Source of the DNA: Haliotis rufescens
Taxonomy: Eukaryota
NCBI RefSeq assembly: GCF_023055435.1
Contig: NW_025964223.1
Span: forward strand, 55,304,001-55,368,000
Length of the DNA stretch: 64,000 bases
Reading direction: 5' to 3'
Position numbers and translations under genes: made by a program
Notes under the pieces: model-generated
The model's database searches: none
What the model saw: the letters and a program-made list of their open reading frames with translations, nothing else
What the model was told of the DNA's origin: nothing
In this document: piece by piece, positions 18,065 through 59,419 of the stretch
Layout: every line of letters starts with the position of its first letter
How positions within the stretch are numbered: position 1 is the stretch's first letter

Positions 18065-18851
18065 GCAGCACAGGGTGTTGTCCATGGAGGCCAACCATGT
18101 AATTGGTTATGAGTTCTGGGAGTGCGTCATGTAACAGTAAAAACGCTTCATCCATTTGGAGAATCTCTTGCTGGTTTTCAGTGAGAGCACCCTTGCCACT
18201 AAGCTACGCAACCGACCACCCTCCAGAGTCCAGATTGTCCGGACCCCCGACCTCCCCGCCCCCCTCCCCCTATTCCTACTTGAAACCCAAATGTAGTATG
18301 TTGTAGGCAGTACAATTATGAGAGATGATTTTGCTGTTTTTGACCCAGTCCTTTTTGAAAATGCTGAATCCTCCCTTGATGTGTGCCATTGTACCCCTCG
18401 GGCGATGAAGGTAGTCGCCCAGCCTGTCAACCAATGTGTTGTCCGGTCAGGCCCGATTAGTGACACCGGCCTTCATATAGCTGGAGTTTTGCTGTATGAC
18501 TAATGTGAAGATCAACACAAAACGTCAATGTCAGAGGATATCCGCCGAAACAGATTCCATTGGGCGTAAAAGGCAAAATAGCGGTGAATCATGTCCTTGC
18601 ATGTGTGAAAAAGCGAATTCAAAACAAAACACATAACTAATTTCATTTATTTGTAATTAGGAATATCAGCGAAAACAATTCAAAAATTATTTAAAAACAG
18701 GATAACATATTTATGATGTTCAAGGAACAACAACCTGTTAACGAAGAAACATCAATTTACGATTGCGAAAGTGGCTTTTCATTTTTTTAGGAATGACGTT
18801 TGCTTAGAACATTTAATTTGAAATAGGCAATTTAGAGTAAGTTCAGGATAA

Positions 18852-20392
18852 TTAACAGAAAAATCGTTTAAAATAGTCGTTCTTTAGAGCAAGTTTGGCT
18901 GTAATTCTATCTAAAGGATTTAAGTCAAGACACTTCTTCAAAAGTGACACAAGCTTTCGGTCAGGAATGTCAAGACCAGATACGTCCAGCTGATTGTGGT
19001 CTTGGGCGATGAACTGAGGTGGTTTTCCCGTCAGACTCTCATACACTGACGCACCAAACATCCACATGTCAAAGGACTTCATTATCTTGTCTTCAACATC
19101 CCTTGTCTTGTTCTGTGGATTGTAGCTTCCGGTACCAAGCCTGATCGCATCGCCAAAGTCGATAACTTTGACCTTTCCACCCTGTCCAATGAGTATATGG
19201 TCTGGCGTTATGTCCCCATGGACTACGTCATGGCTGTGAAGATGTTCAAGACACGTGACAACTTGTTTCATGACTTTCTTCATCGCACCTTGTCTGCGAG
19301 CCTGGCACTTCCTGGCAATGAACTCGGCCATGTTGGATCCGCCGACATACTCCAGTATCATGACTTGGCGGCCCTTGTGTTCAAATAGTTCATAGGCTTT
19401 GATAATGTTCTTGTGTTGGACCTGACCAATGATGTTAAACTCAGTGGTCCATGCTTTGGACACTTCCATCGGGTCTCTGTTTCTTGGGTGCGACACTTTG
19501 GCTGCAAATACTTTTCCGTCTTTGAACACATTGTACACAGTGGCGTTAGCACCAGAGCGGATGACCTCACGGAACATGTAGCCATGGATTGTGAGGCCGA
19601 GGAACGGGTCGCGTGGGAGTGAGCGGAGAAACCCCTCCCCAGCTGATTGAGGTAACTGACAGTTTTCAGGGTGGCGCTGGTTGCAAGGGGGAGTCGCGGC
19701 ATCCGCGGGAGGCGTTGATTTAGACACACACTCCACCAGTCGCTCTACGTCCGACAGACATTTTCTCCATAGTTCTGCTGCAGCATTGTGATGTCCGGCT
19801 TGATGAGCCCACGTCAGATGAGGATCTGAAGACAGTGAAATCATCACATTACAAGTGTTCAGATTTACATAAATTACACACACACACACACACACACTGC
19901 AAAGACATCTAGCAATCAACAAGGTAGACGTGGATGCAAGGTACGCAAATGGAAAGTACGGGGAATCAGAACTCTAATTTGGCCATGTTTTGAAAATAAA
20001 TTATATTAATTATGATAGCTGCTGCTTGTGTGAAATCGGCTAATATGTTTTTTGTCTTGTTTTAAGACGGACACGTTTCAATACAGATTTAATTGGTTTC
20101 AGGAAAAGAATAAAAATAAATGGATTCTAGAGAGAAATGCAAATGTATTAAGCAGCTTTATGATGGCATGTTTAAGAAGTATCGCACGTTTATACAATAG
20201 TTTAAGACTTTTGTGAAAAACAACCACCCGCCGTCTACAATCTGTTAAAAAATCCATTTCGAATTTGCTGGATCGTTCTTTAAAAACTTAATCTTTTTTT
20301 AGAGACCTCGCGCCGCACAACTAATCTAACAGTAAACCCGTTTGGGGTTAATTATACTGACAATAATATTACTTACCAGGAGCCATATCCAT
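18852..20392 (-). CDS. Atypical Ser/Thr protein kinase-fold protein, copy 1 (329 aa, 2 exons)
   Basis: Exon 1 20392-20377 (ATGGATATGGCTCCTG|GTAAGT) and exon 2 19825-18852 (TTCAG|ATCCT), phase-1 join giving MDMAPDPHLTW... Motifs RSGANATVY, FAAK, TEF, HKNII, ILEY, HGDITPDH, IDFG, DMWMFG, PLDRIT. Confidence 0.88.
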
Positions 20393-20458
20393 GAGGGTAT
20401 TGTAACCGATTTTCAGAATAACACGAGCTGTATTTTAGATTAAATCGCCTTACAAAGT

Positions 20459-20546
20459 TTCCGTGAAGAGAAACCACGCCTCGTCTCTAGCGCAATGTGG
20501 CTAAATGTGACGTTCCCTTCTGTGACGTCACACGTTTATGACGTCA
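20459..20546 (-). promoter_or_regulatory. Putative proximal promoter of the kinase gene: two full CREs, one half CRE, one GAS-like site (repeated in each unit)
   Basis: TGACGTCA at 20523-20530 and 20539-20546, TGACG at 20508-20512 and TTCCGTGAA at 20459-20467, lying 70-155 bp upstream of the ATG. Confidence 0.5.
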
Positions 20547-21129
20547 TGTGAGATGTTTTCCGGTTTAACGGGGTCCGGATGAACGAGGCTAGGCTGTTTA
20601 TTTAGAAGGCCAGGTTGCATGATTTTTATAAACGTTTCGGCTGCAGTTAAAAACGAGATTCGTTATTAACATGTGATAAGACCCTGCCTTGTTATATATT
20701 TTTTCTGTTTAATCTACAAATGTATACGTAAAAGTGAGAAGCCTATTTATGGTATGGTGTCCCCCGACGTGATATTGCTGGAATATTGCTAAAAACGGCA
20801 TAAAACCCTACTCACTCACTCACAAAAGTAAAAAGTTTGTACTTAGAGGTTTTCCGTTGTCTTTGAAAGTTCTGAAGAGGTCATCCCTCGGTGAAAAAAA
20901 ACACACATTACACTGGCCTACAAATATATGAAATTTGTGCCCCCGAAGACATTGGCATATCGATCGATTCCCAGACGAGGAGTTAACTCTGTTTGATCTC
21001 TTACAATGATGATGTTTTCATAACGTTTTATTTTTTTATTTGCGGAATATATATTATAATCTGACCTGGTCCAAGTCCGCATTCCTTTGAAATGTCAAAG
21101 TGCTTTTGTCTCTCCATCTCAGGTTTATA

Positions 21130-21289
21130 GAGTGAGTGAGTGAGTATGGTTTTACGCCGCTTTTAGCAATATTCCAACAATATCACGACGGGGGACGCCA
21201 GAAATGGGCTTCACATATTGTACCCATGTCGGGAATCGAACCCGGGTGACGAGCGAACGCTTTTACCACTAGGCTACCCGACCGCCCTC
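21130..21289 (-). mobile_element. SINE family A within the kinase repeat unit (also at ~24967, ~28878, ~32751, ~36618)
   Basis: Reverse-oriented family A sequence flanked by a ~10-bp TSD GGTTTATAGA. Confidence 0.85.
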
Positions 21290-21550
21290 GGGTTCATAGA
21301 CAATGATAAGATTAGAGGATATTTTATGTCTTCCTGCAGTATCCTTCTTTTACATTCCTATAAGACCCATTCTAATCCGGATCTTCACGGGTCTACTGAC
21401 ATATTTATAACCAGATGGCACAAAACGATAAAAGTAGATGGTTTGCGCACCTACCTGTACAAGACACAATACTCTACCACATGTATGGATCCCGTGCTAC
21501 TACAGCAACCTTGCAAACACGACTTGATCGTCTCGATAATAGATCTACGG

Positions 21551-21657
21551 GGTTCCGTTCCACAAAATGATCTTAGCGCTACGATGATCGTAACTCCCAT
21601 ACTTTGAAATAGGCTTACGACTATCGTAGCGCTAAGATCGCTTTGTGGAACTAGGCC
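21551..21657. mobile_element. ~107-bp palindromic PIF/Harbinger-like MITE within the kinase repeat unit
   Basis: GTTCCACAAAATGATCTTAGCGCTACGAT / ATCGTAGCGCTAAGATCGCTTTGTGGAAC inverted repeats. Confidence 0.7.
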
Positions 21658-22666: not shown

Positions 22667-24224
22667 TTAACAGAAAAATCGTTTAAAATAGTCGTTCTTT
22701 AGAGCAAGTTTGGCTGTAATTCTATCTAAAGGATTTAAGTCAAGACACTTCTTCAAAAGTGACACAAGCTTTCGGTCAGGAATGTCAAGACCAGATACGT
22801 CCAGCTGATTGTGGTCTTGGGCTATGAACTGAGGTGGTTTTCCCGTCAGACTCTCATACACTGACGCACCAAACATCCACATGTCAAAGGACTTCATTAT
22901 CTTGTCTTCAACATCCCTTGTCTTGCTCTGTGGATTGTAGCTTCCGGTACCAAGCCTGATCGCATCGCCAAAGTCGATAACTTTGACCTTTCCACCCTGT
23001 CCAATGAGTATATGGTCTGGTGTTATGTCCCCATGGACTACGTCATGGCTGTGAAGATGTTCAAGACACGTGACAACTTGTTTCATGACTTTCTTCATCG
23101 CACCTTGTCTGCGAGCCTGGCACTTCCTGGCAATGAACTCGGCCAGGTTGGATCCGCCGACATACTCCAGTATCATGACTTGGCGGCCCTTGTGTTCAAA
23201 TAGTTCATAGGCTTTGATAATGTTCTTGTGTTGGACCTGACCAATGATGTTAAACTCAGTGGTCCATGCTTTGGACACTTCCATCGGGTCTCTGTTTCTT
23301 GGGTGCGACACTTTGGCTGCAAATACTTGTCCGTCTTTGAACACATTGTACACAGTGGCGTTAGCACCAGAGCGGATGACCTCACGGAACATGTAGCCAT
23401 GGATTGTGAGGCCGAGGAACGGGTCGCGTGGGAGTGAGCGGAGAAACCCCTCCCCAGCTGATTGAGGTAACTGACAGTTTTCAGGGTGGCGCTGGTTGCA
23501 AGGGGGAGTCGCGGCATCCACGGGAGGCGTTGATTTAGACACACACTCCACCAGTCGCTCTACGTCCGACAGACATTTTCTCCATAGTTCTGCTGCAGCA
23601 TTGTGATGTCCGGCTTGATGAGCCCACGTCAGATGAGGATCTGAAGACAGTGAAATCATCACATTACAAGTGTTCAGATTTACATAAATTACACACACAC
23701 ACACTGCAAGCAATACAGACATCTAGCAATCAACAAGGTAGATGAACATATAAAAAGTAAAAGTGGATGCAAGGTATGCAAATGGAAAGTACGGGGAATC
23801 AGAACTCTAATTTGGCTATGTTTTGAAAATAAATTATATTAGTTATGATAGCTGTTGCTTGTGTGAAATCGGCTAATATTTTTTTTGTCTTGTTTTAAGA
23901 CAGACACGTTTCAATACAGATTTAATTGGTTTCAGGAAAAGAATAAAAATAAATGGATTCTGGAGAGAAATACAAATATTATAGCAGCTTTATGATGGCA
24001 TGTTTAAGAAGTATCGCACATTTATTCAATAGTTTAAGACTGGTGTGAAAAACAACCACCCGCCGCCTACAATCTGTTGAAAAATTCATTTCGGATTTGC
24101 TGGATCGTTCTTTAAAAACTTAATCTTTTTTTAGAGACCTCGGTCCACACAACTTATCTAACAGTAAACCCGTTTGGGGTTAATTATACTGACAATAATA
24201 TTACTTACCAGGAGCCATATCCAT
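22667..24224 (-). CDS. Atypical kinase-fold protein, copy 2
   Basis: Exons 24224-24209 and 23640-22667; intact ORF and splice sites. Confidence 0.88.
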
Positions 24225-26510
24225 GAGGGTATTGTAACCGATTTTCAGAATAACACGAGCTGTATTTTAGATTAAATCGCCTTGCAAAGTTTCCGTGAAG
24301 AGAAACCACGCCTCGTCTCTAGCGCAATGTGGCTAAATGTGACGTTCCCTTCTGTGACGTCACACGTTTATGACGTCATGTGAGATGTTTTCCGGTTTAA
24401 CGGGGTCCGGATGAACGAGGCTAGGCTGTTTATTTAGAAGGCCAGGTTGCATGATTTTTATAAACGTTTCGGCTGCAGTTAAAAACGAGATTCGTTATTA
24501 ACATGTGATAAGACCCTGCCTTGTTATATATTTTTTCTGTTTAATCTACAAATGTATACGTAAAAGTGAGAAGCCCTTTTTATGGTATGGTGTCCCCCGA
24601 CGTGATATTGCTGGAATACTGCTAAAAACGGCATAAAACCTTACTCACTCACTCACTCACAAAAGTAAAAAGTTTGTACTTAGAGGTTTTCCGTTGTCTT
24701 TGAAAGTTCTGAAGAGGTCATCCCTCGGTGAAAAAAAACACACATTACACAGGCCTACCAATATATGAAATTTGTGCCCCCGAAGACATTGGCATATCAA
24801 TCGATTCCCAGACGAGGAGTTAACTCTGTTTGATCTCTTACAATGATGATGTTTTCATAACGTTTTATTTTTTTATTTGCGGAATATATATTATAATCTG
24901 ACCTGGTCCAAGTCCGCATTCCTTTGAAATGTCAAAGTGCTTTTGTCTCTCCATCTCAGGTTTATAGAGTGAGTGAGTGAGTATGGTCTTACGCCGCCTT
25001 TAGCAATATTCCAACAATATCACGACGGGGGACGCCAGAAATGGGCTTCACATATTGTACCCATGTCGGGAATCGAACCCGGGTGACGAGCGAACGCTTT
25101 TACCACTAGGCTACCCGACCGCCCTCGGGTTTATAGACAATGATAAGATTAGAGTATATTTTATGTCTTCCTGCAGTACTCTTCTTTTACATTCCTATAA
25201 GACCCATTCTAATCCGGATCTTCACGGGTCTACTGACATATTTATAACCAGATGGCACAAAACGATAAAAGTAGATGGTTCGCGCACCTACCTGTACAAG
25301 ACACAATACTCTACCACATGTATGGATCCCGTGCTACTACAGCAACCTTGCAAACACGACTTGATCGTCTCGATAATAGATCTACGGGGTTCCGTTCCAC
25401 AAAATGATCTTAGCGCTACGATAATCGTAACTCCCATACTTTGAAATAGGCTTATGACTATCGTAGCGCTAAGATCGCTTTGTGGAACTAGGCCCTGAAT
25501 TTTATTGAACCTTTGTGAGACTAGACTGATCATGGGCCAGTTTCGTCATTTCTCGCCATGTTATTCGTCCATGCGTTGGTTCTGTATCAGGCAGAGATAG
25601 CCTTGTAGTTGGTAAGTGATGCCGATCGTGGCCATGTACATGTAGTACGTTCAGTCGAAATAAACCGTCACTTGACACTTTATCTAATCATTTCTGTTAA
25701 GTTTCAGAAGTGTTCAACATGCCTAGTAACCTCGTGTCATATTGCTGATGGAGGTTTCCGTTAAAAGTACACTTGGCATTATTTATCACTTATATAACAG
25801 CTTGGCCCCATTGACCTCTGAATAAAAGTTAGGCAGCATCTTATCGCCCTGTCTGTCATGAGACCTCTGCCCCAAGTGTGGATTCCGGAGCAGTAGTGTT
25901 CCCAGAATCCCATATTTGTCACAGGTGGTTACCATTGAGGATCGGATGGTTACAATGACTGGATCGGGTGTTACCTGTAATGTTGTACGTCTTCTAAGAA
26001 TATTGTTGACCTTGAAGAAAAATTGCCACACTCACTCACTCACTCACTCGAGCTGTCAACCAATGTGTTGTCTGGGTCCGGCCCGATTAGTGACACCAGC
26101 CTTCATATCGCTGGAGTTTTGCTGGATGAGGCATAAAGGACTAATATGAGGATAAATACAAAATGTCAAGGCCAGAGAATATCCGCCGAAACAGATTCCA
26201 TTGGGCGTAAAAGGCAAAATCGCTGTGAAACATGTCCTTGCAAAGAAGAGAATTCAAAACAAAACACAAAACTAATTTCATTTCATTGTATTGATTGATA
26301 ACGGTATTTGGAATTAGGAATATAAGCTTAAACATTTTAAAGTTCATTTAAAAACAGGATAACATATTTTTGAGGTTCCCGGAACAAAAACCTGACAACG
26401 AAGAAACATCAATTTACGATTGCGAAAGTGGCTTTTCGTTTTTTGAGGAATGACGTTTGCATTCTAAACATTTAATTTGAAATAGGCAATTTAGAGTAAG
26501 TTCAGGATAA

Positions 26511-28139
26511 TTAACAGAAAAATCGTTTAAAATAGTCGTTCTTTAGAGCAAGTTTGGCTGTAATTCTATCTAAAGGATTTAAGTCAAGACACTTCTTCAA
26601 AAGTGACACAAGCTTTCGGTCAGGAATGTCAAGACCAGATACGTCCAGCTGATTGTGGTCTTGGGCTATGAACTGAGGTGGTTTTCCCGTCAGACTCTCA
26701 TACACTGACGCACCAAACATCCACATGTCAAAGGACTTCATTATCTTGTCTTCAACATCCCTTGTCTTGCTCTGTGGATTGTAGCTTCCGGTACCAAGCC
26801 TGATCGCATCGCCAAAGTCGATCACTTTGACCTTTCCACCCTGTCCAATGAGTATATGGGCTGGCGTTATGTCCCCATGGACTACGTCATGGCTGTGAAG
26901 ATGTTCAAGACACGTGACAACTTGTTTCATGACTTTCTTCATCGCACCTTGTCTGCGAGCCTGGCACTTCCTGGCAATGAACTCGGCCAGGTTGGATCCG
27001 CCGACATACTCCAGTATCATGACTTGGCGGCCCTTGTGTTCAAATAGTTCATAGGCTTTGATAATGTTCTTGTGTTGGACCTGACCAATGATGTTAAACT
27101 CAGTGGTCCATGCTTTGGACACTTCCATCGGGTCTCTGTTTCTTGGGTGCGACACTTTGGCTGCAAATACTTTCCCGTCCTTGAACACATTGTACACAGT
27201 GGCGTTAGCACCAGAGCGGATGACCTCACGGAACATGTAGCCATGGATTGTGAGGCCGAGGAACGGGTCGCGTGGGAGTGAGCGGAGAAACCCCTCCCCA
27301 GCTGATTGAGGTAACTGACAGTTTTCAGGGTGGCGCTGGTTGCAAGGGGGAGTCGCGGCATCCACGGGAGGCGTTGATTTAGACACACACTCCACCAGTC
27401 GCTCTACGTCCGACGGGAACAGACATTTTCTCCATAGTTTTGCTGCAGCATTGTGATGTCCGGCTTGATGAGCCAACGTGAGATGAGGAAATGAAGACAG
27501 TGAAATAATCACATTACAANNNNNNNNNNNNNNNNNNNNNNNNNNNNNNNNNNNNNNNNNNNNNNNNNNNNNNNNNNNNNNNNNNNNNNNNNNNNNNNNN
27601 NNNNNNNNNNNNNNNNNNNNNNNNNNNNNNNNNNNNNNNNNNNNNNNNNNNNNNNNNNNNNNNACAAGGTAGACGTGGATGCAAGGTACGCAAATCGAAA
27701 GTACGGGGAATCAGAACTCTAATTTGGCCATGTTTTGAAAATAAATTATATTAATTATGATAGCTGCTGCTTGTGTGAAATCGGCTAATATGTTTTTTGT
27801 CTTGTTTTAAGACAGACACGTTTCAATACAGATTTAATTGGTTTCAGGAAAAGAATAAAAATAAATGGAATCTAGAGAGAAATGCAAATGTATTAAGCAG
27901 CTTTATGATGGCATGTTTAAGAAGTATCGCACGTTTATACAATAGTTTAAGACTGATGTGAAAAAAAAACAAAACCGCCGTCTACTATCTGTTAAAAAAT
28001 CCATTTCGAATTTGGTGGATCGTTCTTTAAAAACTTAATCTTTTTTTAGAGACCTCGGTCCACACAACTTATCTAACAGTAAACCCGTTTAGGGTTAATT
28101 ATACTGACAACAATATTACTTACCAGGAGCCATATCCAT
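26511..28139 (-). CDS. Atypical kinase-fold protein, copy 3 (acceptor appears mutated; intron spans an assembly gap)
   Basis: Exon 2 27490-26511 is open with a 6-bp FP insertion. The acceptor reads CAT rather than CAG and lies ~30 bp from the N run. Exon 1 28139-28124 lies beyond the gap. Confidence 0.65.
27520..27663. other. Assembly gap (144 N) at the position of the intronic (AC)n tract of copy 3
   Basis: Run of N. Confidence 0.99.
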
Positions 28140-30425
28140 GAGGGTATTGGAAACCGATTTTCAGAATAACACGAGCTGTATTTTAGATTAAATCGCCTTA
28201 CAAAGTTTCCGTGAAGAGAAACCACGCCTCGTCTCTAGCGCAATGTGGCTAAATGTGACGTTCCCTTCTGTGACGTCACACGTTTATGACGTCATGTGAG
28301 ATGTTTTCCGGTTTAACGGGGTCCGGATGAACGAGGCTAGGCTGTTTATTTAGAAGGCCAGGTTGCATGATTTTTATAAACGTTTCGGCTGCAGTTAAAA
28401 ACGAGATTCGTTATTAACATGTGATAAGACCCTGCCTTGTTATATATTTTTTCTGTTTAATCTACAAATGTATACGTAAAAGTGAGAAGCCTATTTATGG
28501 TATGGTGTCCCCCGACGTGATATTGCTGGAATATTGCTAAAAACGGCATAAAACCCTACTCACTCACTCACAAAAGTAAAAAGTTTGTACTTAGAGGTTT
28601 TCCGTTGTCTTTGAAAGTTCTGAAGAGGTCATCCCTCGGTGAAAAAAACACATATTACACTGGCCTACCAATATATGAAATTTGTGCCCCCGAAGACATT
28701 GGCATATCGATCGATTCCCAGACGAGGAGTTAACTCTGTTTGATCTCTTACAGTGATGATGTTTTCATAACGTTTTATTTTTTTTATTTGCGGAATATAT
28801 ATTATAATCTGACCTGGTCCAAGTCCGCATTCCTTTGAAATGTCAAAGTGCTTTTGTCTCTCCATCTCAGGTTTATAGAGTGAGTGAGTGAGTGAGTATG
28901 GTTTTACGCCGCTTTTAGCAATATTCCAACAATATCACGACGGGGGACGCCAGAAATGGGCTTCACATATTGTACCCATGTCGGGAATCGAACCCGGGTG
29001 ACGAGCGAACGCTTTTACCACTGGGCTACCCGACCGCCCTCGGGTTTATAGACAATGATAAGATTAGAGGATATTTTATGTCTTCCTGCAGTATCCTTCT
29101 TTTACATTCCTATAAGACCCATTCTAATCCGGATCTTCACGGGTCTACTGACATATTTATAACCAGATGGCACAAAACGATAAAAGTAGATGGTTCGCGC
29201 ACCTACCTGTACAAGACACAATACTCTACCACATGTATGGATCCCGTGCTACTACAGCAACCTTGCAAACACGACTTGATCGTCTCGATAATAGATCTAC
29301 GGGGTTCCGTTCCACAAAATGATCTTAGCGCTACGATGATCGTAACCCCCATACTTTGAAATAGGCTTACGACTATCGTAGCGCTAAGATCGCTTTGTGG
29401 AACTAGGCCCTGAATTTTATTGAACCTTTGTGAGACTAGACTGATCATGGGCCAGTTTCGTCATTTCTCGCCATGTTATTCGTCCATGCGTTGGTTCTGT
29501 ATCAGGCAGAGATTGCCTTGTAGTTGGTAAGTGATGCCGATCGTGGCCATGTACATGTAGTACGTTCAGTCGAAATAAACCGTCACTTGACACTTTATCT
29601 AATCATTTCTGTTAAGTTTCAGAAGTGTTCAACATGCCTAGTAACCTCGTGTCATATTGCTGAACGAGGTTTCCGTTAAAAGTACACTTGGCATTATTTA
29701 TCACTTATATAACAGCTTGGCCCCATTGACCTCTGAATAAAAGTTAGGCAGCATCTTATCGCCCTGTCTGTCATGAGACCTCTGCCCCAAGTGTGGATTC
29801 CGGAGCAGTAGTGTTCCCAGAATCCCCTATTTGTCACAGGTGGTTACCATTGAGGATCGGATGGTTACAATGACTGGATCGGGTGTTACCTGTAATGTTG
29901 TACGTCTTCTAAGAATATTGTTGACCTTGAAGAAAAATTGCCACACTCACTCACTCACTCACTCGAGCTGTCAACCAATGTGTTGTCTGGGTCCGGCCCG
30001 ATTAGTGACACCAGCCTTCATATCGCTGGAGTTTTGCTGGATGAGGCATAAAGGACTAATATGAGGATAAATACAAAATGTCAAGGCCAGAGAATATCCG
30101 CCGAAACAGATTCCATTGGGCGTAAAAGGCAAAATCGCTGTGAAACATGTCCTTGCAAAGAAGAGAATTCAAAACAAAACACAAAACTAATTTCATTTCA
30201 TTGTATTGATTGATAACGGTATTTGGAATTAGGAATATAAGCTTAAACATTTTAAAGTTCATTTAAAAACAGGATAACATATTTTTGAGGTTCCCGGAAC
30301 AAAAACCTGACAACGAAGAAACATCAATTTACGATTGCGAAAGTGGCTTTTCGTTTTTTGAGGAATGACGTTTGCATTCTAAACATTTAATTTGAAATAG
30401 GCAATTTAGAGTAAGTTCAGGATAA

Positions 30426-31452
30426 TTAACAGAAAAATCGTTTAAAATAGTCGTTCTTTAGAGCAAGTTTGGCTGTAATTCTATCTAAAGGATTTAAGTC
30501 AAGACACTTCTTCAAAAGTGACACAAGCTTTCGGTCAGGAATGTCAAGACCAGATACGTCCAGCTGATTGTGGTCTTGGGCGATGAACTGAGGTGGTTTT
30601 CCCGTCAGACTCTCATACAATGACGCACCAAACATCCACATGTCAAAGGACTTCATTATCTTGTCTTCAACATCCCTTGTCTTGCTCTGTGGATTGTAGC
30701 TTCCGGTACCAAGCCTGATCGCATCGCCAAAGTCGATAACTTTGACCTTTCCACCCTGTCCAATGAGTATATGGTCTGGCGTTATGTCCCCATGGACTAC
30801 GTCATGGCTGTGAAGATGTTCAAGACACGTGACAACTTGTTTCATGACTTTCTTCATCGCACCTTGTCTGCGAGCCTGGCACTTCCTGGCAATGAACTCG
30901 GCCAGGTTCGATCCGCCGACATACTCCAGTATCATGACTTGGCGGCCCTTGTGTTCAAATAGTTCATAGGCTTTGATAATGTTCTTGTGTTGGACCTGAC
31001 CAATGATGTTAAACTCAGTGGTCCATGCTTTGGACACTCCCATCGGGTCTCTGTTTCTTGGGTGCGACACTTTGGCTGCAAATACTTGTCCGTCTTTGAA
31101 CACATTGTACACAGTGGCGTTAGCACCAGAGCGGATGACCTCACGGAACATGTAGCCATGGATTGTGAGGCCGAGGAACGGGTCGCGTGGGAGTGAGCGG
31201 AGAAACCCCTCCCCAGCTGATTGAGGTAACTGACAGTTTTCAGGGTGGCGCTGGTTGCAAGGGGGAGTCGCGGCATCCACGGGAGGCGTTGATTTAGACA
31301 CACACTCCACCAGTCGCTCTACGTCCGACGGGAACAGACATTTTCTCCATAGTTCTGCTGCAGCATTGTGATGTCCGGCTTGATGAGCCCACGTGAGATG
31401 AGGATCTGAAGACAGTGAAATCATCGCATTACAAGTGTTCAGATTTACATAA

Positions 31453-31503
<51 letters not shown>

Positions 31504-32011
31504 AGCAATACAGACATCTAGCAATCAACAAGGTAGATGAACATATAAAAAGTAAAAGTGGATGCAATGTACGCAAATGGAAAGTACGGGGAATCAGAAC
31601 TCTAATTTGGCTATGTTTTGAAAATAAATTATATTAGTTATGATAGCTGCTGCTTGTGTGAAATCGGCTAATATGTTTTTTTGTCTTGTTTTAAGACCGA
31701 CACGTTTCATTACAGATTTAATTGGTTTCAGGAAAAGAATAAAAATAAATGGATTCTGGAGAGAAATACAAATATTATAGCAGCTTTATGATGGCATGTT
31801 TAAGAAGTATCGCACGTTTATTCAATAGTTTAAGACTGGTGTGAAAAACAACCACCCGCCGCCTACAATCTGTTGAAAAATCCATTTCGAATTTGCTGGA
31901 TCGTTCTTAATCCTTTTTTAGAGACCTCGCGCCGCACAACTAATCTAACAGTAAACCCGTTTGGGGTTAATTATACTGACAACAATATTACTTACCAGGA
32001 GCCATATCCAT
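30426..32011 (-). CDS. Atypical kinase-fold protein, copy 4 (331 aa)
   Basis: Exons 32011-31996 and 31405-30426; FP insertion; intact. Confidence 0.88.
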
Positions 32012-34294
32012 GAGGGTATTGTAACCGATTTTCAGAATAACACGAGCTGTATTTTAGATTAAATCGCCTTACAAAGTTTCCGTGAAGAGAAACCACGCCT
32101 CGTCTCTAGCGCAATGTGGCTAAATGTGACGTTCCCTTCTGTGACGTCACACGTTTATGACGTCATGTGAGATGTTTTCCGGTTTAACGGGGTCCGGATG
32201 AACGAGGCTAGGCTGTTTATTTAGAAGGCCAGGTTGCATGATTTTAATAAACGTTTCGGCTGCAGTTAAAAACGAGATTCGTTATTAACATGTGATAAGA
32301 CCCTGCTTGTTATATATTTTTCTGTTTAATCTACAAATGTATACGTAAAAGTGAGAAGCCTATTTATGGTATGGTGTCCCCCGACGTGATATTGCTGGAA
32401 TATTGCTAAAAACGGCATAAAACCCTACTCACTCACTCACTCACAAAAGTAAAAAGTTTGTACTTAGAGGTTTTCCGTTGTCTTTGAAAGTTCTGAAGAG
32501 GTCATCCCTCGGTGAAAAAAAACACACATTACACTGGCCTACCAATATATGAAATTTGTGCCCCCGAAGACATTGGCATATCGATCGATTCCCAGACGAG
32601 GAGTTAACTCTGTTTGATCTCTTACAATGATGATGTTTTCATAACGTTTTATTTTTTTATTTGCGGAATATATATTATAATCTGACCTGGTCCAAGTCCG
32701 CATTCCTTTGAAATGTCAAAGTGCTTTTGTCTCTCCATCTCAGGTTTATAGAGTGAGTGAGTGAGTATGGTTTTACGCCGCTTTTAGCAATATTCCAACA
32801 ATATCACGACGGGGGACGCCAGAAATGGGCTTCACATATTGTACCCATGTCGGGAATCGAACCCGGGTGACGAGCGAACGCTTTTACCACTGGGCTACCC
32901 GACCGCCCTCGGGTTTATAGACAATGATAAGATTAGAGGATATTTTATGTCTTCCTGCAGTATCCTTCTTTTACATTCCTATAAGACCCATTCTAATCCG
33001 GATCTTCACGGGTCTACTGACATATTTATAACCAGATGGCACAAAACGATAAAAGTAGATGGTTCGCGCACCTACCTGTACAAGACACAATACTCTACCA
33101 CATGTATGGATCCCGTGCTACTACAGCAACCTTACAAACACGACTTGATCGTCTCGATAATAGATCTACGGGGTTCCGTTCCACAAAATGATCTTAGCGC
33201 TACGATGATCGTAACTCCCATACTTTGAAATAGGCTTACGACTATCGTAGAGCTAAGATCGCTTTGTGGAACTAGGCCCTGAATTTTATTGAACCTTTGT
33301 GAGACTAGACTGATCATGGGCCAGTTTCGTCATTTCCCGCCATGTTATTCGTCCATGCGTTGGTTCTGTATCAGGCAGAGATTGCCTTGTAGTTGGTAAG
33401 TGATGCCGATCGTGGCCATGTACATGTAGTACGTTCAGTCGAAATAAACCGTCACTTGACACTTTATCTAATCATTTCTGTTAAGTTTCAGAAGTGTTCA
33501 ACATGCCTAGTAACCTCGTGTCATATTGCTGATGGAGGTTTCCGTTAAAAGTACACTTGGCATTATTTATCACTTATATAACAGCTTGGCCCCATTGACC
33601 TCTGAATAAAAGTTAGGCAGCATCTTATCGCCCTGTCTGTCATGAGACCTCTGCCCCAAGTGTGGATTCCGGAGCAGTAGTGTTCCCAGAATCCCATATT
33701 TGTCACAGGTGGTTACCATTGAGGATCGGATGGTTACAATGACTGGATCGGGTGTTACCTGTAATGTTGTACGTCTTCTAAGAATATTGTTGACCTTGAA
33801 GAAAAATTGCCACACTCACTCACTCACTCACTCGAGCTGTCAACCAATGTGTGGTCTGGGTCCGGCCCGATTAGTGACACCAGCCTTCATATCGCTGGAG
33901 TTTTGCTGGATGAGGCATAAAGGACTAATATGAGGATAAATACAAAATGTCAAGGCCAGAGAATATCCGCCGAAACAGATTCCATTGGGCGTAAAAGGCA
34001 AAATCGCTGTGAAACATGTCCTTGCAAAGAAGAGAATTCAAAACAAAACACAAAACTAATTTCATTTCATTGTATTGATTGATAACGGTATTTGGAATTA
34101 GGAATATAAGCTTAAACATTTTAAAGTTCATTTAAAAACAGGATAACATATTTATGAGGTTCCCGGAACAAAAACCTGACAACGAAGAAACATCAATTTA
34201 CGATTGCGAAAGTGGCTTTTCATTTTTTGAGGAATGAAGTTTGCATTCTAAACATTTAATTTGAAATAGGCAATTTAGAGTAAGTTCGGGATAA

Positions 34295-35315
34295 TTAATA
34301 GAAAAATCGTTTAAAATAGTCGTTCTTTAGAGCAAGTTTGGCTGTAATTCTATCTAAAGGATTTAAGTCAAGACACTTCTTCAAAAGTGACAAAAGCTTT
34401 CGGTCAGGAATGTCAAGACCAGATACGTCCAGCTGATTGTGGTCTTGGGCGATGAACTGAGGTGGTTTTCCCGTCAGACTCTCATACAATGACGCACCAA
34501 ACATCCACATGTCAAAGGACTTCATTATCTTGTCTTCAACATCCCTTGTCTTGCACTGTGGATTGTAGCTTCCGGTACCAAGCCTGATCGCATCGCCAAA
34601 GTCGATAACTTTGACCTTTCCACCCTGTCCAATGAGTATATGGGCTGGCGTTATGTCCCCATGGACTACGTCATGGCTGTGAAGATGTTCAAGACACGTG
34701 ACAACTTGTTTCATGACTTTCTTCATCGCACCTTGTCTGCGAGCCTGGCACTTCCTGGCAATGAACTCGGCCAGGTTCGATCCGCCGACATACTCCAGTA
34801 TCATGACTTGGCGGCCCTTGTGTTCAAATAGTTCATAGGCTTTGATAATGTTCTTGTGTTGGACCTGACCAATGATGTTAAACTCAGTGGTCCATGCTTT
34901 GGACACTCCCATCGGGTCTCTGTTTCTTGGGTGCGACACTTTGGCTGCAAATACTTGTCCGTCTTTGAACACATTGTACACAGTGGCGTTAGCACCAGAG
35001 CGGATGACCTCACGGAACATGTAGCCATGGATTGTGAGGCCGAGGAACGGGTCGCGTGGGAGTGAGCGGAGAAACCCCTCCCCAGCTGATTGAGGTAACT
35101 GACAGTTTTCAGGGTGGCGCTGGTTGCAAGGGGGAGTCGCGGCATCCACGGGAGGCGTTGATTTAGACACACACTCCACCAGTCGCTCTACGTCCGACAG
35201 ACATTTTCTCCATAGTTCTGCTGCAGCATTGTGATGTCCGGCTTGATGAGCCCACGTGAGATGAGGATCTGAAGACAGTGAAATCATCGCATTACAAGTG
35301 TTCAGATTTACATAA

Positions 35316-35370
<55 letters not shown>

Positions 35371-35878: not shown

Positions 35879-38161
35879 GAGGGTATTGTAACCGATTTTC
35901 AGAATAACACGAGCTGTATTTTAGATTAAATCGCCTTACAAAGTTTCCGTGAAGAGAAACCACGCCTCGTCTCTAGCGCAATGTGGCTAAATGTGACGTT
36001 CCCTTCTGTGACGTCACACGTTTATGACGTCATGTGAGATGTTTTCCGGTTTAACGGGGTCCGGATGAACGAGGCTAGGCTGTTTATTTAGAAGGCCAGG
36101 TTGCATGATTTTAATAAACGTTTCGGCTGCAGTTAAAAACGAGATTCGTTATTAACATGTGATAAGACCCTGCTTGTTATATATTTTTCTGTTTAATCTA
36201 CAAATGTATACGTAAAAGTGAGAAGCCTATTTATGGTATGGTGTCCCCCGACGTGATATTGCTGGAATATTGCTAAAAACGGCATAAAACCCTACTCACT
36301 CACTCACTCACAAAAGTAAAAAGTTTGTACTTAGAGGTTTTCCGTTGTCTTTGAAAGTTCTGAAGAGGTCATCCCTCGGTGAAAAAAAACACACATTACA
36401 CTGGCCTACCAATATATGAAATTTGTGCCCCCGAAGACATTGGCATATCGATCGATTCCCAGACGAGGAGTTAACTCTGTTTGATCTCTTACAATGATGA
36501 TGTTTTCATAACGTTTTATTTTTTTATTTGCGGAATATATATTATAATCTGACCTGGTCCAAGTCCGCATTCCTTTGAAATGTCAAAGTGCTTTTGTCTC
36601 TCCATCTCAGGTTTATAGAGTGAGTGAGTGAGTATGGTTTTACGCCGCTTTTAGCAATATTCCAACAATATCACGACGGGGGACGCCAGAAATGGGCTTC
36701 ACATATTGTACCCATGTCGGGAATCGAACCCGGGTGACGAGCGAACGCTTTTACCACTGGGCTACCCGACCGCCCTCGGGTTTATAGACAATGATAAGAT
36801 TAGAGGATATTTTATGTCTTCCTGCAGTATCCTTCTTTTACATTCCTATAAGACCCATTCTAATCCGGATCTTCACGGGTCTACTGACATATTTATAACC
36901 AGATGGCACAAAACGATAAAAGTAGATGGTTCGCGCACCTACCTGTACAAGACACAATACTCTACCACATGTATGGATCCCGTGCTACTACAGCAACCTT
37001 ACAAACACGACTTGATCGTCTCGATAATAGATCTACGGGGTTCCGTTCCACAAAATGATCTTAGCGCTACGATGATCGTAACTCCCATACTTTGAAATAG
37101 GCTTACGACTATCGTAGAGCTAAGATCGCTTTGTGGAACTAGGCCCTGAATTTTATTGAACCTTTGTGAGACTAGACTGATCATGGGCCAGTTTCGTCAT
37201 TTCCCGCCATGTTATTCGTCCATGCGTTGGTTCTGTATCAGGCAGAGATTGCCTTGTAGTTGGTAAGTGATGCCGATCGTGGCCATGTACATGTAGTACG
37301 TTCAGTCGAAATAAACCGTCACTTGACACTTTATCTAATCATTTCTGTTAAGTTTCAGAAGTGTTCAACATGCCTAGTAACCTCGTGTCATATTGCTGAT
37401 GGAGGTTTCCGTTAAAAGTACACTTGGCATTATTTATCACTTATATAACAGCTTGGCCCCATTGACCTCTGAATAAAAGTTAGGCAGCATCTTATCGCCC
37501 TGTCTGTCATGAGACCTCTGCCCCAAGTGTGGATTCCGGAGCAGTAGTGTTCCCAGAATCCCATATTTGTCACAGGTGGTTACCATTGAGGATCGGATGG
37601 TTACAATGACTGGATCGGGTGTTACCTGTAATGTTGTACGTCTTCTAAGAATATTGTTGACCTTGAAGAAAAATTGCCACACTCACTCACTCACTCACTC
37701 GAGCTGTCAACCAATGTGTGGTCTGGGTCCGGCCCGATTAGTGACACCAGCCTTCATATCGCTGGAGTTTTGCTGGATGAGGCATAAAGGACTAATATGA
37801 GGATAAATACAAAATGTCAAGGCCAGAGAATATCCGCCGAAACAGATTCCATTGGGCGTAAAAGGCAAAATCGCTGTGAAACATGTCCTTGCAAAGAAGA
37901 GAATTCAAAACAAAACACAAAACTAATTTCATTTCATTGTATTGATTGATAACGGTATTTGGAATTAGGAATATAAGCTTAAACATTTTAAAGTTCATTT
38001 AAAAACAGGATAACATATTTTTGAGGTTCCCGGAACAAAAACCTGACAACGAAGAAACATCAATTTACGATTGCGAAAGTGGCTTTTCATTTTTTGAGGA
38101 ATGAAGTTTGCATTCTAAACATTTAATTTGAAATAGGCAATTTAGAGTAAGTTCGGGATAA

Positions 38162-39709
38162 TTAATAGAAAAATCGTTTAAAATAGTCGTTCTTTAGAGC
38201 AAGTTTGGCTGTAATTCTATCTAAAGGATTTAAGTCAAGACACTTCTTCAAAAGTGACACAAGCTTTCGGTCAGGAATGTCAAGACCAGATACGTCCAGC
38301 TGATTGTGGTCTTGGGCGATGAACTGAGGTGGTTTTCCCGTCAGACTCTCATACAATGACGCACCAAACATCCACATGTCAAAGGACTTCATTATCTTGT
38401 CTTCAACATCCCTTGTCTTGCACTGTGGATTGTAGCTTCCGGTACCAAGCCTGATCGCATCGCCAAAGTCGATAACTTTGACCTTTCCACCCTGTCCAAT
38501 GAGTATATGGGCTGGCGTTATGTCCCCATGGACTACGTCATGGCTGTGAAGATGTTCAAGACACGTGACAACTTGTTTCATGACTTTCTTCATCGCACCT
38601 TGTCTGCGAGCCTGGCACTTCCTGGCAATGAACTCGGCCAGGTTCGATCCGCCGACATACTCCAGTATCATGACTTGGCGGCCCTTGTGTTCAAATAGTT
38701 CATAGGCTTTGATAATGTTCTTGTGTTGGACCTGACCAATGATGTTAAACTCAGTGGTCCATGCTTTGGACACTTCCATCGGGTCTCTGTTTCTTGGGTG
38801 CGACACTTTGGCTGCAAATACTTTCCCGTCCTTGAACACATTGTACACAGTGGCGTTAGCACCAGAGCGGATGACCTCACGGAACATGTAGCCATGGATT
38901 GTGAGGCCGAGGAACGGGTCGCGTGGGAGTGAGCGGAGAAACCCCTCCCCAGCTGATTGAGGTAACTGACAGTTTTCAGGGTGGCGCTGGTTGCAAGGGG
39001 GAGTCGCGGCATCCACGGGAGGCGTTGATTTAGACACACACTCCACCAGTCGCTCTACGTCCGACAGACATTTTCTCCATAGTTCTGCTGCAGCATTGTG
39101 ATGTCCGGCTTGATGAGCCCACGTGAGATGAGGATCTGAAGACAGTGAAATCATCACATTACAAGTGTTCAGATTTACATAAATTACACACACACACTGC
39201 AAGCAATACAGACATCTAGCAATCAACAAGGTAGATGAACATATAAAAAGTAAAAGTGGATGCAAGGTACGCAAATGGAAAGGACGGGGAATCAGAACTC
39301 TAATTTGGCTATGTTTTGAAAATAAATTATATTAGTTATGATAGCTGCTGCTTGTGTGAAATCGGCTAATATGTTTTTTTGTCTTGTTTTAAGACAGACA
39401 CGTTTCAATACAGATTTAATTGGTTTCAGGAAAAGAATAAAAATAAATGGATTCTGGAGAGAAATACAAATATTATAGCAGCTTTATGATGGCATGTTTA
39501 AGAAGTATCGCACATTTATTCAATAGTTTAAGACTGGTTTGAAAAACAACCACCCGCCGCCTACAATCTGTTGAAAAATCCATTTCGAGTTTGCTGGATC
39601 GTTCTTAATCCTTTTTTAGAGACCTCGCGCCGCACAACTAATCTAACAGTAATCCGGTTTGGGGTTAATAATACTGACAACAATATTACTTACCAAGAGC
39701 CATATCCAT
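38162..39709 (-). CDS. Atypical kinase-fold protein, copy 6
   Basis: Exons 39709-39694 (MDMAL) and 39135-38162; intact; second CRE mutated to TGACATCA. Confidence 0.88.
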
Positions 39710-41137
39710 GAGGGTATTGGAAACCGATTTCCAGAATAACACGAGCTGTATTTTAGATTAAATCGCCTTACAAAGTTTCCGTGAAGAGAAACCACGCCTC
39801 GTCTCTAGCGCAATGTGGCTAAATGTGACGTTCCCTTCTGTGACGTCACACGTTTATGACATCATGTGTGATGTTTTCCGGTTTAACGGGGTCCGGATTA
39901 ACGAGGCTAGGCTGTTTATTTAGAGGGCCAGGTTGCCGGATTTTATAAACGTTTCGGCTGCAGTTAAAAACGAGATTCGGTATTTACATGTGATAAAACC
40001 CTGCCTTGTTATATATTTTTTCTGTTCAATCTACAAAAGTACAAGAATGAAGCCTATTTATGGTATCGTGTCCCCCGCCGTGATATTGCTGGAATATTGC
40101 TAAAAACGGCATAAAACCCTACTCACTCACTCACAAAAGTAAAAAGTTTGTACTTCGAGGTTTTCCGTTGTCTTCGAAAGTTCTGAAGAGGTCATCCTTC
40201 GGTGAAAAAAACACACATTGCACTGGCCTACCAATATATGAAATTTATGCCCGCGTAGAAATTTGCGTCTCGATCGATGCTCAGACGAGGGCATAAGTTA
40301 ACTGTGTTTCATCTCTTACAATGATGATGTTTTCATAACGTTTTTGTATGTATTTGCGGAATATATATTATAATCTTACCTGGTGAAATGTCAAAGTGTT
40401 TTTGTCTCTCCATCTCAGGTTTATAGAGTGAGTGAGTGAGTGCATTAACATTAAGTCTTTTCAGGGAGATCATGAAACAAACGTACAAGGACATGTAGAG
40501 TGTCACCCAAAAATATGAAATAAGGGGAGGCTCAATATTTTCAGTACATTAGTGCATCAAAATTCTCTGACACCCAACCAACACTCCCAACCCCAATATC
40601 TAAGTGACAGAGGTGACACTGTGTGTGGAAATGATGTTTTAATATACATAAAAGAAATTCTCGATAAGCTGCACTACAGTTGATGATGGGAAGATATAAT
40701 ATTTTTTTATCAGAAACGTTGGTGAAACATTTAATATATGTTTACAGATATTGTTATTAAAATTATCATGAACATGACATTGATGCCATATTGTTCTCTC
40801 TCGTCGTACAAACCACCTAATTAAAAAATATGAATAATATCACAAACTTCATAAACCCTTGTAACCCACATTTTCATAAACCCGTGGCTCGTGATTTCAC
40901 TACATACACTATTGCTCGATATAAAGGACCACATGTGAATCACAGCCCCTTCTACAAAGAGATCTTAGAGCTGTGATCGCAGCCCCTAAACTTTAACTGG
41001 TGTAGTCAGTTCTCCAAATTCGGTTTCCGTTTGTTTTGAAAATACGGGAGTAAACGCGCAAACGCATCCAAGGGACGTAATCATTGTTGGAACTCTTCTA
41101 TTTGTTAGGGTGAGAAAGTGTCTTTCGTAAATATATT

Positions 41138-59370: not shown

Positions 59371-59419
59371 CATGGTCGAGTCATTTCAAACGTACAATTG
59401 TTGACAACACACGCCTATC

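What the first reader, a model, noticed from the sequence alone, without database searches (positions are those of the whole stretch)
18420..40442. Young tandem array of at least six atypical kinase-fold genes between two housekeeping genes
Seen: near-identical ~3.85-kb units, all six main ORFs open, inserted between HACE1 and PSMA1. I cannot assign the protein to a named kinase family: it has a unique ~85-aa Cys/Pro-containing N-terminus and a compact kinase domain encoded in a single exon. Inference: a lineage-specific, dosage-amplified family such as those seen in invertebrate immunity or spermatogenesis. The nearly intronless kinase domain could indicate a retrogene or horizontally/virally acquired origin.
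Basis: partly seen in the sequence, partly recalled or inferred. Interest (0 to 1): 0.8.

Follow-up and report, generated by a model that had tools for sequence, protein, structure and literature searches.

The report
Six-copy abalone kinase-like gene array
Red abalone carries six near-identical, expressed tandem copies of a kinase-like gene found only in abalones, whose catalytic site has been rewired yet kept by selection; it is a genuine lineage-specific gene amplification and not a foreign or viral acquisition.

Summary
Window 18424-40441 is a head-to-tail array of exactly six gene cores (~2.8 kb) separated by five repeat-rich spacers (~1.07 kb), lying on the minus strand between HACE1 and PSMA1. 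The genome is most likely Haliotis rufescens. NCBI already models these genes under inconsistent automatic names.

Each gene has two exons. A tiny exon 1 encodes MDMAP, a ~0.55-0.63 kb intron holds a (TG)n microsatellite, and exon 2 carries the rest. The N gap lies inside the intron of copy 3.

RNA-type public runs cover only the exons, and one contig crosses the splice.

The protein belongs to a family found only in Haliotis. Its marks are an N-terminal HNAAAELW motif and a conserved double-CRE promoter.

The array and its sister paralogs form one derived clade:
- the catalytic loop changed from HRDIKPxN to H(G/Q)DITPxH;
- the activation/P+1 loop is deleted;
- dN/dS is ~0.3, the same as in canonical paralogs.

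Copies are mosaics (gene conversion) and the array edges are more diverged, so "young" may partly be homogenisation. H. cracherodii is annotated with one array-type gene but four of the sister type.

Horizontal or viral origin is not supported. Catalytic status and tissue of expression remain untested. The scan had noted the rewired motifs on this same window, not on other DNA.

The parts
18424..40441 (-). Whole tandem array: left stub (18424-18803, 82% to unit tail), six gene cores and five TE-rich spacers
18852..19825 (-). Copy 1, exon 2 (323 codons + stop); matches the database model P0016
20377..20392 (-). Copy 1, coding part of exon 1 (ATGGATATGGCTCCTG, donor GTAAGT)
20523..20546 (-). Copy 1, double CRE (TGACGTCA twice, 16 nt apart) just upstream of exon 1
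22667..23640 (-). Copy 2, exon 2; matches the database model P0014
24209..24224 (-). Copy 2, coding part of exon 1
24355..24378 (-). Copy 2, double CRE
26511..27490 (-). Copy 3, exon 2 (open, 325 codons) but acceptor AG absent (TTCAT|TT); W>L and E>K in the N-terminal motif; the database model P0015 is cut to 241 aa
27520..27663 (.). Assembly gap (144 N), inside the intron of copy 3 where the other copies have (TG)n; not filled
28124..28139 (-). Copy 3, coding part of exon 1, donor intact
28271..28294 (-). Copy 3, double CRE
30426..31405 (-). Copy 4, exon 2 (325 codons); matches the database model P0013; RNA-type contigs reach on to about 30201 (3' UTR of at least ~225 nt)
31406..31995 (-). 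Copy 4, intron (590 nt, phase 1, GT..AG) with (TG)n microsatellite; no RNA-type cover in bins 31471-31804 and next to none (depth 4) in 31805-31971, DNA-type run covers it
31996..32146 (-). Copy 4, exon 1 (5' UTR plus ATG at 32011); the 5' end is approximate, taken from RNA-type contigs
32142..32165 (-). Copy 4, double CRE at the transcript start; an ACGTCAC half-site follows
34295..35268 (-). Copy 5, exon 2; second half of the fused database model P0017
35863..35878 (-). Copy 5, coding part of exon 1
36009..36032 (-). Copy 5, double CRE
38162..39135 (-). Copy 6, exon 2; first half of the fused database model P0017
39694..39709 (-). Copy 6, coding part of exon 1 (CCT>CTT, P>L)
39841..39864 (-). 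Copy 6 promoter: one perfect CRE, the upstream one weakened to TGATGTCA; this edge region is 92-97% identical to the other copies
32767..33836 (.). Example of the ~1.07-kb spacer (unit positions 2386-3455), largely high-copy interspersed repeats; absent after copy 6

Best explanation
The region is a real six-gene tandem array in the red abalone genome. It encodes a 329-331-aa kinase-fold protein of a family known only from Haliotis.

Shown:
- Each gene has a double-CRE promoter, a tiny exon 1, one intron and a single large exon.
- It is transcribed and spliced, and variants typical of several copies appear in the RNA-type contigs.
- The array genes and two sister paralogs on another chromosome form one derived clade. 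That clade lost, once, the catalytic-loop Lys and Asn (HRDIKPxN to H(G/Q)DITPxH), most of the activation/P+1 loop including the APE glutamate, and the ancestral start codon.
- The clade evolves under the same purifying selection as the canonical paralogs.
- The copies exchange sequence.

Inferred:
- The array grew by unequal crossing-over between units and is kept alike by gene conversion. Amplification of this paralog is specific to the H. rufescens lineage, while H. cracherodii amplified the sister paralog.
- Because the peptide-binding platform and two phosphotransfer residues are gone, while the ATP-lysine, the alpha-C glutamate, the catalytic Asp and the DFG Asp remain, the protein most likely binds nucleotide but acts as a weak or non-catalytic regulator (pseudokinase-like scaffold or switch).
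- Its amount is raised by copy number, and its transcription is governed by CREB/ATF-type factors.
For: - Array and open ORFs.
- Pkinase domain at E 1e-37.
- Gene model, splice sites and part coordinates.
- Expression: runs X1, X4 and X6 (three studies, two organism labels) cover 30201-31406 and 31999-32146. They have no cover in bins 31471-31804 and next to none (depth 4) in 31805-31971, and almost none (depth 0-1.5) in spacer bins 33308-33808. The DNA-type run X15 covers all of these. One X6 contig joins 31406 to 31999. Variants at 31088, 31089 and 31095, which distinguish copies, co-occur in X1.
- Restriction to Haliotis. Family size in the own genome.
- Motif changes. One derived clade (100/100) on a stem of 0.72.
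- Selection: omega 0.28-0.33 at dS 0.64-0.75 for array versus sister paralogs, and 0.33 for canonical L010 versus L011.
- Mosaic copies: 240 of 630 site pairs are incompatible. Edges are diverged.
- CREs: 13 in the window against 1.08 expected, conserved in paralogs L007, L008, L009 and L011.
- Eight residue differences between the H. cracherodii ortholog and each of copies 1, 2 and 4.
- Species-specific counts.
Against: - All three residues of the classical pseudokinase test (VAIK Lys, HRD Asp, DFG Asp) are retained in the array copies. His could replace Asn as a metal ligand, so real catalytic activity is not excluded.
- The structure model is only moderate (pLDDT 63; C-lobe 46-77 by 10-residue blocks) and says nothing about ATP binding.
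- The RNA nature of the runs is the tool's guess, supported only by the exon-restricted cover and the splice contig.
- Copy number was not checked by read depth against a single-copy baseline.
- Copy numbers in H. cracherodii rest on annotation alone.
- CRE function is inferred from sequence conservation.
Confidence: 0.6

Rival explanations
1. The array protein is an active but atypical kinase with changed chemistry or substrate class. It might be metal-independent or use His as the metal ligand, or it might act on a small molecule or an unusual protein site, since it has lost the peptide-binding P+1 loop. Amplification would then raise enzymatic capacity.
For: - The ATP Lys, alpha-C Glu, catalytic Asp and DFG Asp are all kept under purifying selection.
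- The HGD...H catalytic loop and the missing activation loop recall small-molecule kinases. Pfam gives secondary hits to APH (E 2e-5) and ABC1 exactly on this loop.
- From memory: CASK lacks the metal-binding Asn and DFG Asp yet is active.
Against: - The sister clade, with the same loop, has also lost the DFG Asp (NFG or NFA) and is equally constrained. That argues the conserved function does not need phosphotransfer.
- The glycine-rich loop is reduced to one Gly (SGANAT).
- The APH and ABC1 hits are far weaker than the Pkinase hit. The resemblance is convergent, because the ancestors had HRDIKPxN.
Confidence: 0.3
2. The six copies are an assembly artefact: over-expansion of one or two real copies or of allelic haplotypes.
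For: - There is an assembly gap inside the array.
- No depth baseline could be obtained.
Against: - Every copy has private substitutions, a different (TG)n length and a different intron length of 551-633 nt.
- The edges differ from the interior.
- RNA-type and DNA-type contigs from other samples carry several of the copy-distinguishing variants together and break at them.
- NCBI models separate genes.
Confidence: 0.04
3. The array gene was acquired from a virus or by horizontal transfer, or is a fresh retrocopy of a conserved multi-exon kinase.
For: - The kinase domain is in one exon.
- There is no one-to-one orthologue among named kinases.
Against: - The closest relatives are paralogs in the same genome. 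They share the intron position, the exon-1 donor and the CRE promoter.
- GC content is like the surroundings.
- Nothing above generic kinase similarity was seen outside Haliotis.
- A retrocopy would not carry its parent's promoter and 5' intron.
- This concerns the array. The origin of the family founder stays open.
Confidence: 0.03

Closest known systems
Canonical Haliotis paralogs of the same family (e.g. P0003, P0171, P0185; NCBI names 'PLK4-like', 'spindle assembly checkpoint kinase homolog', 'aurora kinase C-like')
   Same: - N-terminal HNAAAELW motif and C-terminal RITAK..AL..YF motif.
- Two-exon structure with the donor at the same place.
- CRE-containing promoter.
- 38-48% protein identity.
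   Different: - The canonical paralogs keep HRDIKPxN, DFGGA, a full activation loop with PPE, and a 20-aa exon-1 peptide.
- They are single-copy and dispersed.
Sister paralogs on contig C13 (L007, L008; H. cracherodii P0002 group, named 'CDK2 homolog')
   Same: - The same rewired catalytic loop (HxDITPxH) and the same activation-loop deletion.
- The same loss of the ancestral ATG and the same double CRE.
- 63-67% identity.
   Different: - The DFG Asp is also lost (NFG or NFA).
- There are two dispersed copies in H. rufescens but four annotated in H. cracherodii.
CAMK-like and related Ser/Thr kinases with solved structures (CaMKII, CDKL3, twitchin, MARK, ULK2, Aurora A)
   Same: Bilobal protein kinase fold. 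Best sequence E-values are 1e-17 to 1e-20 (1e-26 for the canonical paralog). Foldseek gives probability 1.0 and TM 0.5-0.65.
   Different: - Only 20-26% identity, and no single family stands out.
- No regulatory domains.
- The catalytic-loop Lys and Asn, the APE motif and two of the three G-loop glycines are missing.
Lineage-specific tandem expansions of kinase or pseudokinase genes (from memory: fish Pim-related kinases, mammalian intronless TSSK genes, Plasmodium FIKK)
   Same: Small proteins that are almost only a kinase domain, with few or no coding introns, taxon-restricted, amplified locally, and with some members carrying degraded motifs.
   Different: No sequence relationship was shown here. 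These are analogies recalled from memory and were not tested.

Membership tests
Eukaryotic protein kinase superfamily (Pfam PF00069) | Profile match above the curated cut-off over the whole domain | tested here: met
   130-134 bits against a cut-off of 31.7, profile positions 3-263 of 263; kinase fold in the model and in Foldseek
Eukaryotic protein kinase superfamily (Pfam PF00069) | ATP-anchoring Lys (VAIK) and alpha-C Glu | tested here: met
   FAAKV Lys115 and Glu134 are invariant in the family alignment
Catalytically canonical Ser/Thr kinase | Catalytic loop HRDxKxxN (catalytic Asp, Lys, metal-binding Asn) | tested here: not met
   The loop reads HGDITP(D/A)H. The Asp is kept, Lys has become Thr and Asn has become His. 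Canonical paralogs have HRDIKPxN
Catalytically canonical Ser/Thr kinase | Glycine-rich loop GxGxxG and activation segment ending in APE | tested here: not met
   The G-loop is SGANAT (one Gly). A 13+4-residue deletion removes the P+1 loop and the PPE glutamate
Pseudokinase by the classical three-residue rule (lacks VAIK Lys, HRD Asp or DFG Asp; rule recalled from the kinome literature) | At least one of the three residues missing | tested here: not met
   The array copies keep all three (K115, D210, D229). The sister C13-type paralogs do meet the rule (NFG or NFA)
Named kinase families used in the NCBI names (Aurora, CDK2, PLK4, MARK, RSK, PAK3) | Clear best match or orthology to that family | tested here: not met
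   Top PDB hits mix CDKL3, twitchin, CaMKII, SNF1, Rad53, CDK and DAPK with similar E-values. The six copies carry four different names. The 651-aa 'RSK-like' model is copies 6 and 5 fused
Tandem gene array under concerted evolution | Head-to-tail units, with copies more alike within the species than to the orthologue | tested here: met
   Spacing 3815-3915 bp. Eight residue differences between the H. cracherodii protein and each of copies 1, 2 and 4. The array clade has 100/99 support
Tandem gene array under concerted evolution | Mosaic variant patterns, and edge units more diverged than interior ones | tested here: met
   240 of 630 informative site pairs show all four gametes. The left stub is 82% and the upstream part of copy 6 is 92-93% identical, against 97.4-99.6% for whole interior units
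Retrogene | No introns, poly(A) remnant, target-site duplications, intron-bearing parent gene | tested here: inconclusive
   The coding sequence is nearly intronless, but a phase-1 intron after codon 5 is shared by the whole family. No parent gene was found. No poly(A) remnant or duplications were seen at the array edges
Horizontally or virally acquired gene | Closest relatives lie outside the host lineage; foreign composition | tested here: not met
   The closest relatives are all Haliotis. GC is 0.39-0.45, against 0.36-0.48 in the flanks

The most novel reading that the evidence does not exclude
A genus-restricted kinase clade gave up canonical protein phosphorylation for a new, still selected activity (a nucleotide-gated scaffold, or a kinase of a new substrate class). 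It is now in a copy-number race in which sister abalone species amplify different paralogs: six array-type copies in H. rufescens against four sister-type copies in H. cracherodii. All are under one conserved cAMP-responsive promoter. This could tie the family to a fast-evolving, species-specific process such as reproduction or larval settlement.
Probability: 0.12. Interest if true: 0.65.

Novelty: new variant of a known kind. Interest (0 to 1): 0.4.

Why it matters
- It defines an undescribed, abalone-only branch of the protein kinase superfamily. Public annotation currently mislabels it under at least ten unrelated kinase names.
- It shows a dated, single-step loss of catalytic-loop residues and of the activation loop, followed by unchanged purifying selection. 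That is a clean natural case for how kinases turn into pseudokinases or change chemistry.
- The six-copy array, the reciprocal amplification in a sister species and the conserved double-CRE promoter give testable handles: copy-number variation among individuals of a farmed and conserved species, and cAMP induction.
- It is nonetheless one more lineage-specific kinase expansion, a phenomenon well known in other animals.

Tried and rejected
Synteny of the HACE1-PSMA1 interval and copy number in H. cracherodii therefore could not be read from DNA. I relied on protein cluster listings instead.
- Read laying allows one call, so no single-copy depth baseline was available and copy number by depth was not tested.
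- The ESM Atlas gave only generic kinase clusters, with SBK1-like as a weak lead.
- Foldseek against PDB gave generic kinases.
- Two literature searches found nothing on this family.
- The bacterial-type promoter and terminator scan is irrelevant for an animal gene.
- Two scripts failed on an over-strict pattern.
- No canonical AATAAA was seen at the 3' end of the RNA contigs.
- Considered and rejected: assembly artefact, viral or horizontal origin, recent retrocopy (see the rival explanations).
- Handling notes: the genome search fetched by itself a locus (L006) that overlaps the N gap, and my ORF listing printed a translation across it.
The spliced proteins used in alignments and in the fold are the database records P0013, P0014 and P0016, returned by the listing of cluster members.
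Full report
**Observation.**
The window holds six direct repeats with start-to-start spacing of 3815-3915 bp. BLAST of one unit against the window shows that the array runs from 18424 to 40441. Interior units are 97.4-99.6% identical. A left stub (18424-18803) is only 82% identical to the unit tail, and the last unit is 93% identical and stops at unit position 2385. Each unit has an open minus-strand ORF of 333-382 codons as listed mechanically, with a full-length Pfam Pkinase match at E about 1e-37.

The geometry is six cores of ~2.8 kb and five spacers of ~1.07 kb: 6 x 2799 + 5 x 1070 = 22,144 bp, against 22,018 observed. Six is therefore the exact number in this assembly. The spacer and parts of the upstream region are high-copy interspersed repeats, with depths of 10^3 to 10^6 in every run. 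A ~170-bp SINE-like element there recurs at least seven times elsewhere in the window.

**The gap.**
The 144 N at 27520-27663 were examined first. The letters on both sides align collinearly with the other units, at unit-4 positions 1053 and 1168. The missing stretch corresponds to the (TG)n microsatellite that the other copies carry in their intron. The gap ends 27 nt upstream of copy 3's acceptor position, so it is intronic and frame is not an issue. I did not fill it. A locus fetched automatically by the genome search (L006) overlaps it, and I made no use of its letters there.

**Organism and existing annotation.**
The best protein hits are Haliotis. One cluster member (P0015) is flagged as encoded by the window itself and lies on a 63.3-Mb H. 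rufescens contig. The window is G000:C445:55304001-55368000.

NCBI models correspond to the copies as follows:

| Copy | Model | Length | NCBI name |
|---|---|---|---|
| 1 | P0016 | 329 aa | probable spindle assembly checkpoint kinase homolog |
| 2 | P0014 | 329 aa | aurora kinase C-like |
| 3 | P0015 | 241 aa | none shown (model truncated at the gap) |
| 4 | P0013 | 331 aa | aurora kinase C-like |
| 6 + 5 | P0017 | 651 aa | ribosomal protein S6 kinase alpha-2-like (read-through fusion of two copies) |

The genes are therefore already in the databases, but under inconsistent automatic names. I found no paper on them.

**Gene structure and expression.**
On the minus strand of copy 4, exon 1 ends with ATGGATATGGCTCCTG followed by GTAAGT at 31996. 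A 590-nt intron (31995-31406) holds the (TG)n run. Exon 2 starts at 31405 after TTCAG. This gives MDMAPDPHLTW, as in the NCBI models.

Exon 1, the donor and the promoter are 99% identical in all six copies, and all part coordinates were checked. Copy 3 lacks the acceptor AG. Five of its 11 differences from copy 6 lie within 80 nt of the gap edge, so this could be contig-end error.

Public runs behave as follows:
- Three runs guessed to be RNA (X1, X4, X6; three studies, two organism labels) cover 30201-31406 and 31999-32146.
- They have no cover in intron bins 31471-31804 and next to none (depth 4, X1 only) in 31805-31971. Spacer bins 33308-33808 have almost none (depth 0-1.5).
- A DNA-type run (X15) covers all of these stretches.
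- One X6 contig joins 31406 to 31999.
- In X1, the variants at 31088, 31089 and 31095, which distinguish copy types 1, 3/6 and 2/4/5, occur together. More than one copy type therefore appears to be transcribed.

Tissue is unknown, because the run labels are coded.

**Family and distribution.**
The window's own genome has the six array copies and two paralogs at 66-67% identity on contig C13, 1.47 Mb apart. Further paralogs at 31-48% identity lie on C583, C223, C334, C79, C556 and C113. Nearly all match as one uninterrupted exon.

All paralogs share an N-terminal motif HNAAAELW and a C-terminal RITAK..AL..YF motif. In between is a Pro/Ser-rich linker of variable length, reaching ~400 residues of tandem repeat in the 716-aa member.

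An exhaustive HMMER profile search of 1.84 billion cluster representatives gave four single-stretch hits among the 150 best listed, which reach down to 183 bits. They score 559, 516, 504 and 219 bits, and all are from Haliotis. The ten top hits I looked up by cluster include multi-kinase-domain proteins of birds, protists and bacteria, whose scores are sums over domains. A word search with the family alignment drops from 450 bits (Haliotis) to 113 bits (a ciliate CDPK-like protein). Within the reach of these databases, the family is restricted to Haliotis.

**What changed in the array protein.**
Canonical paralogs have SGGTAT, HRDIKPxNILIG, DFGGA and a full activation segment with TPxYxPPE. 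The array proteins differ as follows:
- the G-loop is SGANAT;
- the catalytic loop is HGDITP(D/A)HILIG;
- the DFG motif reads DFGDA;
- a 13+4-residue deletion removes the P+1 loop and the APE glutamate.

The C13-type sisters share the loop (HQDITPSH) and the deletion, and have also lost the DFG aspartate (NFG, and NFA in one). The ATP lysine, the alpha-C glutamate and the catalytic aspartate are invariant.

A maximum-likelihood tree puts array and C13-type proteins in one clade (100/100) on a long stem of 0.72 substitutions per site, nested among canonical members. The rewiring therefore happened once. The same clade lost the ancestral ATG in exon 1 and uses a downstream one.

The AlphaFold model, built from a shallow 12-sequence alignment, gives mean pLDDT 63. 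By 10-residue blocks the N-lobe reaches 72-93 and the C-lobe 46-77. Residues 1-76 are disordered except for a helix over the HNAAAELW motif. Foldseek finds only generic kinases.

**Selection and array dynamics.**
- Among the six copies, 7 variable codons are synonymous and 11 nonsynonymous, against a neutral expectation near 25 nonsynonymous.
- Array versus C13-type gives dS 0.64-0.75 and omega 0.28-0.33.
- Two canonical paralogs give omega 0.33 at dS 0.63. The rewired clade is therefore as constrained as the canonical one.
- CDS identity among copies (98.6-99.6%) exceeds intron identity (92.7-99.8%). The microsatellite inflates apparent intron divergence.
- 240 of 630 informative site pairs show all four gametes, so the copies are mosaics.
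- The left stub and copy 6's 5' region are far more diverged than the interior.

Together this fits an array older than its interior identity suggests, homogenised by conversion or unequal crossing-over.

Eight residues differ between the single annotated H. cracherodii array-type protein and each of copies 1, 2 and 4. H. cracherodii has four distinct C13-type proteins, against two in H. rufescens. This suggests reciprocal, species-specific amplification, but only at annotation level.

**Promoter.**
Two perfect TGACGTCA palindromes 16 nt apart, plus an ACGTCAC half-site, lie at the 5' end of the RNA-type contigs in copies 1-5. Copy 6 keeps one. The window has 13 such sites against 1.08 expected. 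The same arrangement stands upstream of L007, L008 and L011, and L009 has one perfect copy with half-sites beside it. One full CRE with the half-site and the exon-1 donor are invariant in the alignment across paralogs whose synonymous sites are saturated. From established knowledge, TGACGTCA is the consensus cAMP response element bound by CREB/ATF bZIP factors. Regulation by such factors is inferred and was not tested.

**Mechanism.**
- Shown: a real, expressed, spliced, selected six-copy array of a Haliotis-only kinase-fold gene with a rewired active site.
- Inferred, about 55-60%: the protein binds nucleotide but has little or no protein kinase activity and acts as a regulator whose dose is raised by copy number.
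- Rival, about 30%: it is an active kinase with altered metal use or substrate class.
- Assembly artefact and foreign origin are each unlikely (3-4%).

**Flanks.**
The last HACE1 exon ends near 6184 on the + strand. PSMA1 exons start near 42.9 kb on the + strand, and one of them (43554-) was verified against solved structures. The array is on the opposite strand to both.

**Verdict.**
This is a lineage-specific kinase-like expansion with some instructive features, and it is of moderate interest.

Noticed in passing
window 15179-18064: A 24-nt minisatellite (consensus CTGAGTAGGAGGACAAATAACTGT, about 125 copies, 89% matches) lies about 360 bp from the left edge of the kinase array. It gives long spurious ORFs in three frames.
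   Followed up: partly
window 1256-1426, 42269-42385, 51158-51323, 51687-51854, 59419-59590, 59617-59771, 63011-63180, and unit positions 1991-2061 and 2370-2530 of each array unit: A ~170-bp SINE-like interspersed repeat. The array ends on the right within ~15 bp of the start of this element, and each unit carries an inverted fragment pair of it.
   Followed up: partly
window 4533-5772 (+) and 2625-3229 (-): Short tandem arrays (periods ~94 nt and ~74 nt) that repeat sequence at HACE1 exon boundaries, seen as series of near-identical ORFs. They are already the subject of other notes on this window.
   Followed up: no
L012 (G000:C79:29661702-29665535), proteins P0026 and P0181: A 716-aa family member carries ~400 residues of Pro/Ser/His-rich tandem repeat (PSVHVPAPARGKT-like) between the HNAAAELW motif and a canonical kinase domain. 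It is conserved between H. rufescens and H. cracherodii.
   Followed up: no
H. cracherodii proteins P0002, P0019, P0020, P0021 (one 82-Mb contig): Four distinct sister-type (NFG or NFA) proteins with near-consecutive accession numbers, against two dispersed loci in H. rufescens. This may be a reciprocal tandem amplification in the sister species.
   Followed up: partly
window 27440-27519 (copy 3, next to the gap): Five substitutions cluster within 80 nt of the gap edge. The four nearest the gap are all changes to T on the gene strand, and one removes the splice acceptor. This may be contig-end sequence error rather than biology.
   Followed up: partly
proteins P0025 and relatives (Pipra filicauda, Pseudopipra pipra): Among the top profile hits are bird 'PAK3-like' proteins with four kinase stretches (2027 aa), probably fused models of another lineage-specific kinase array. 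They are unrelated to the abalone family beyond the kinase fold.
   Followed up: no
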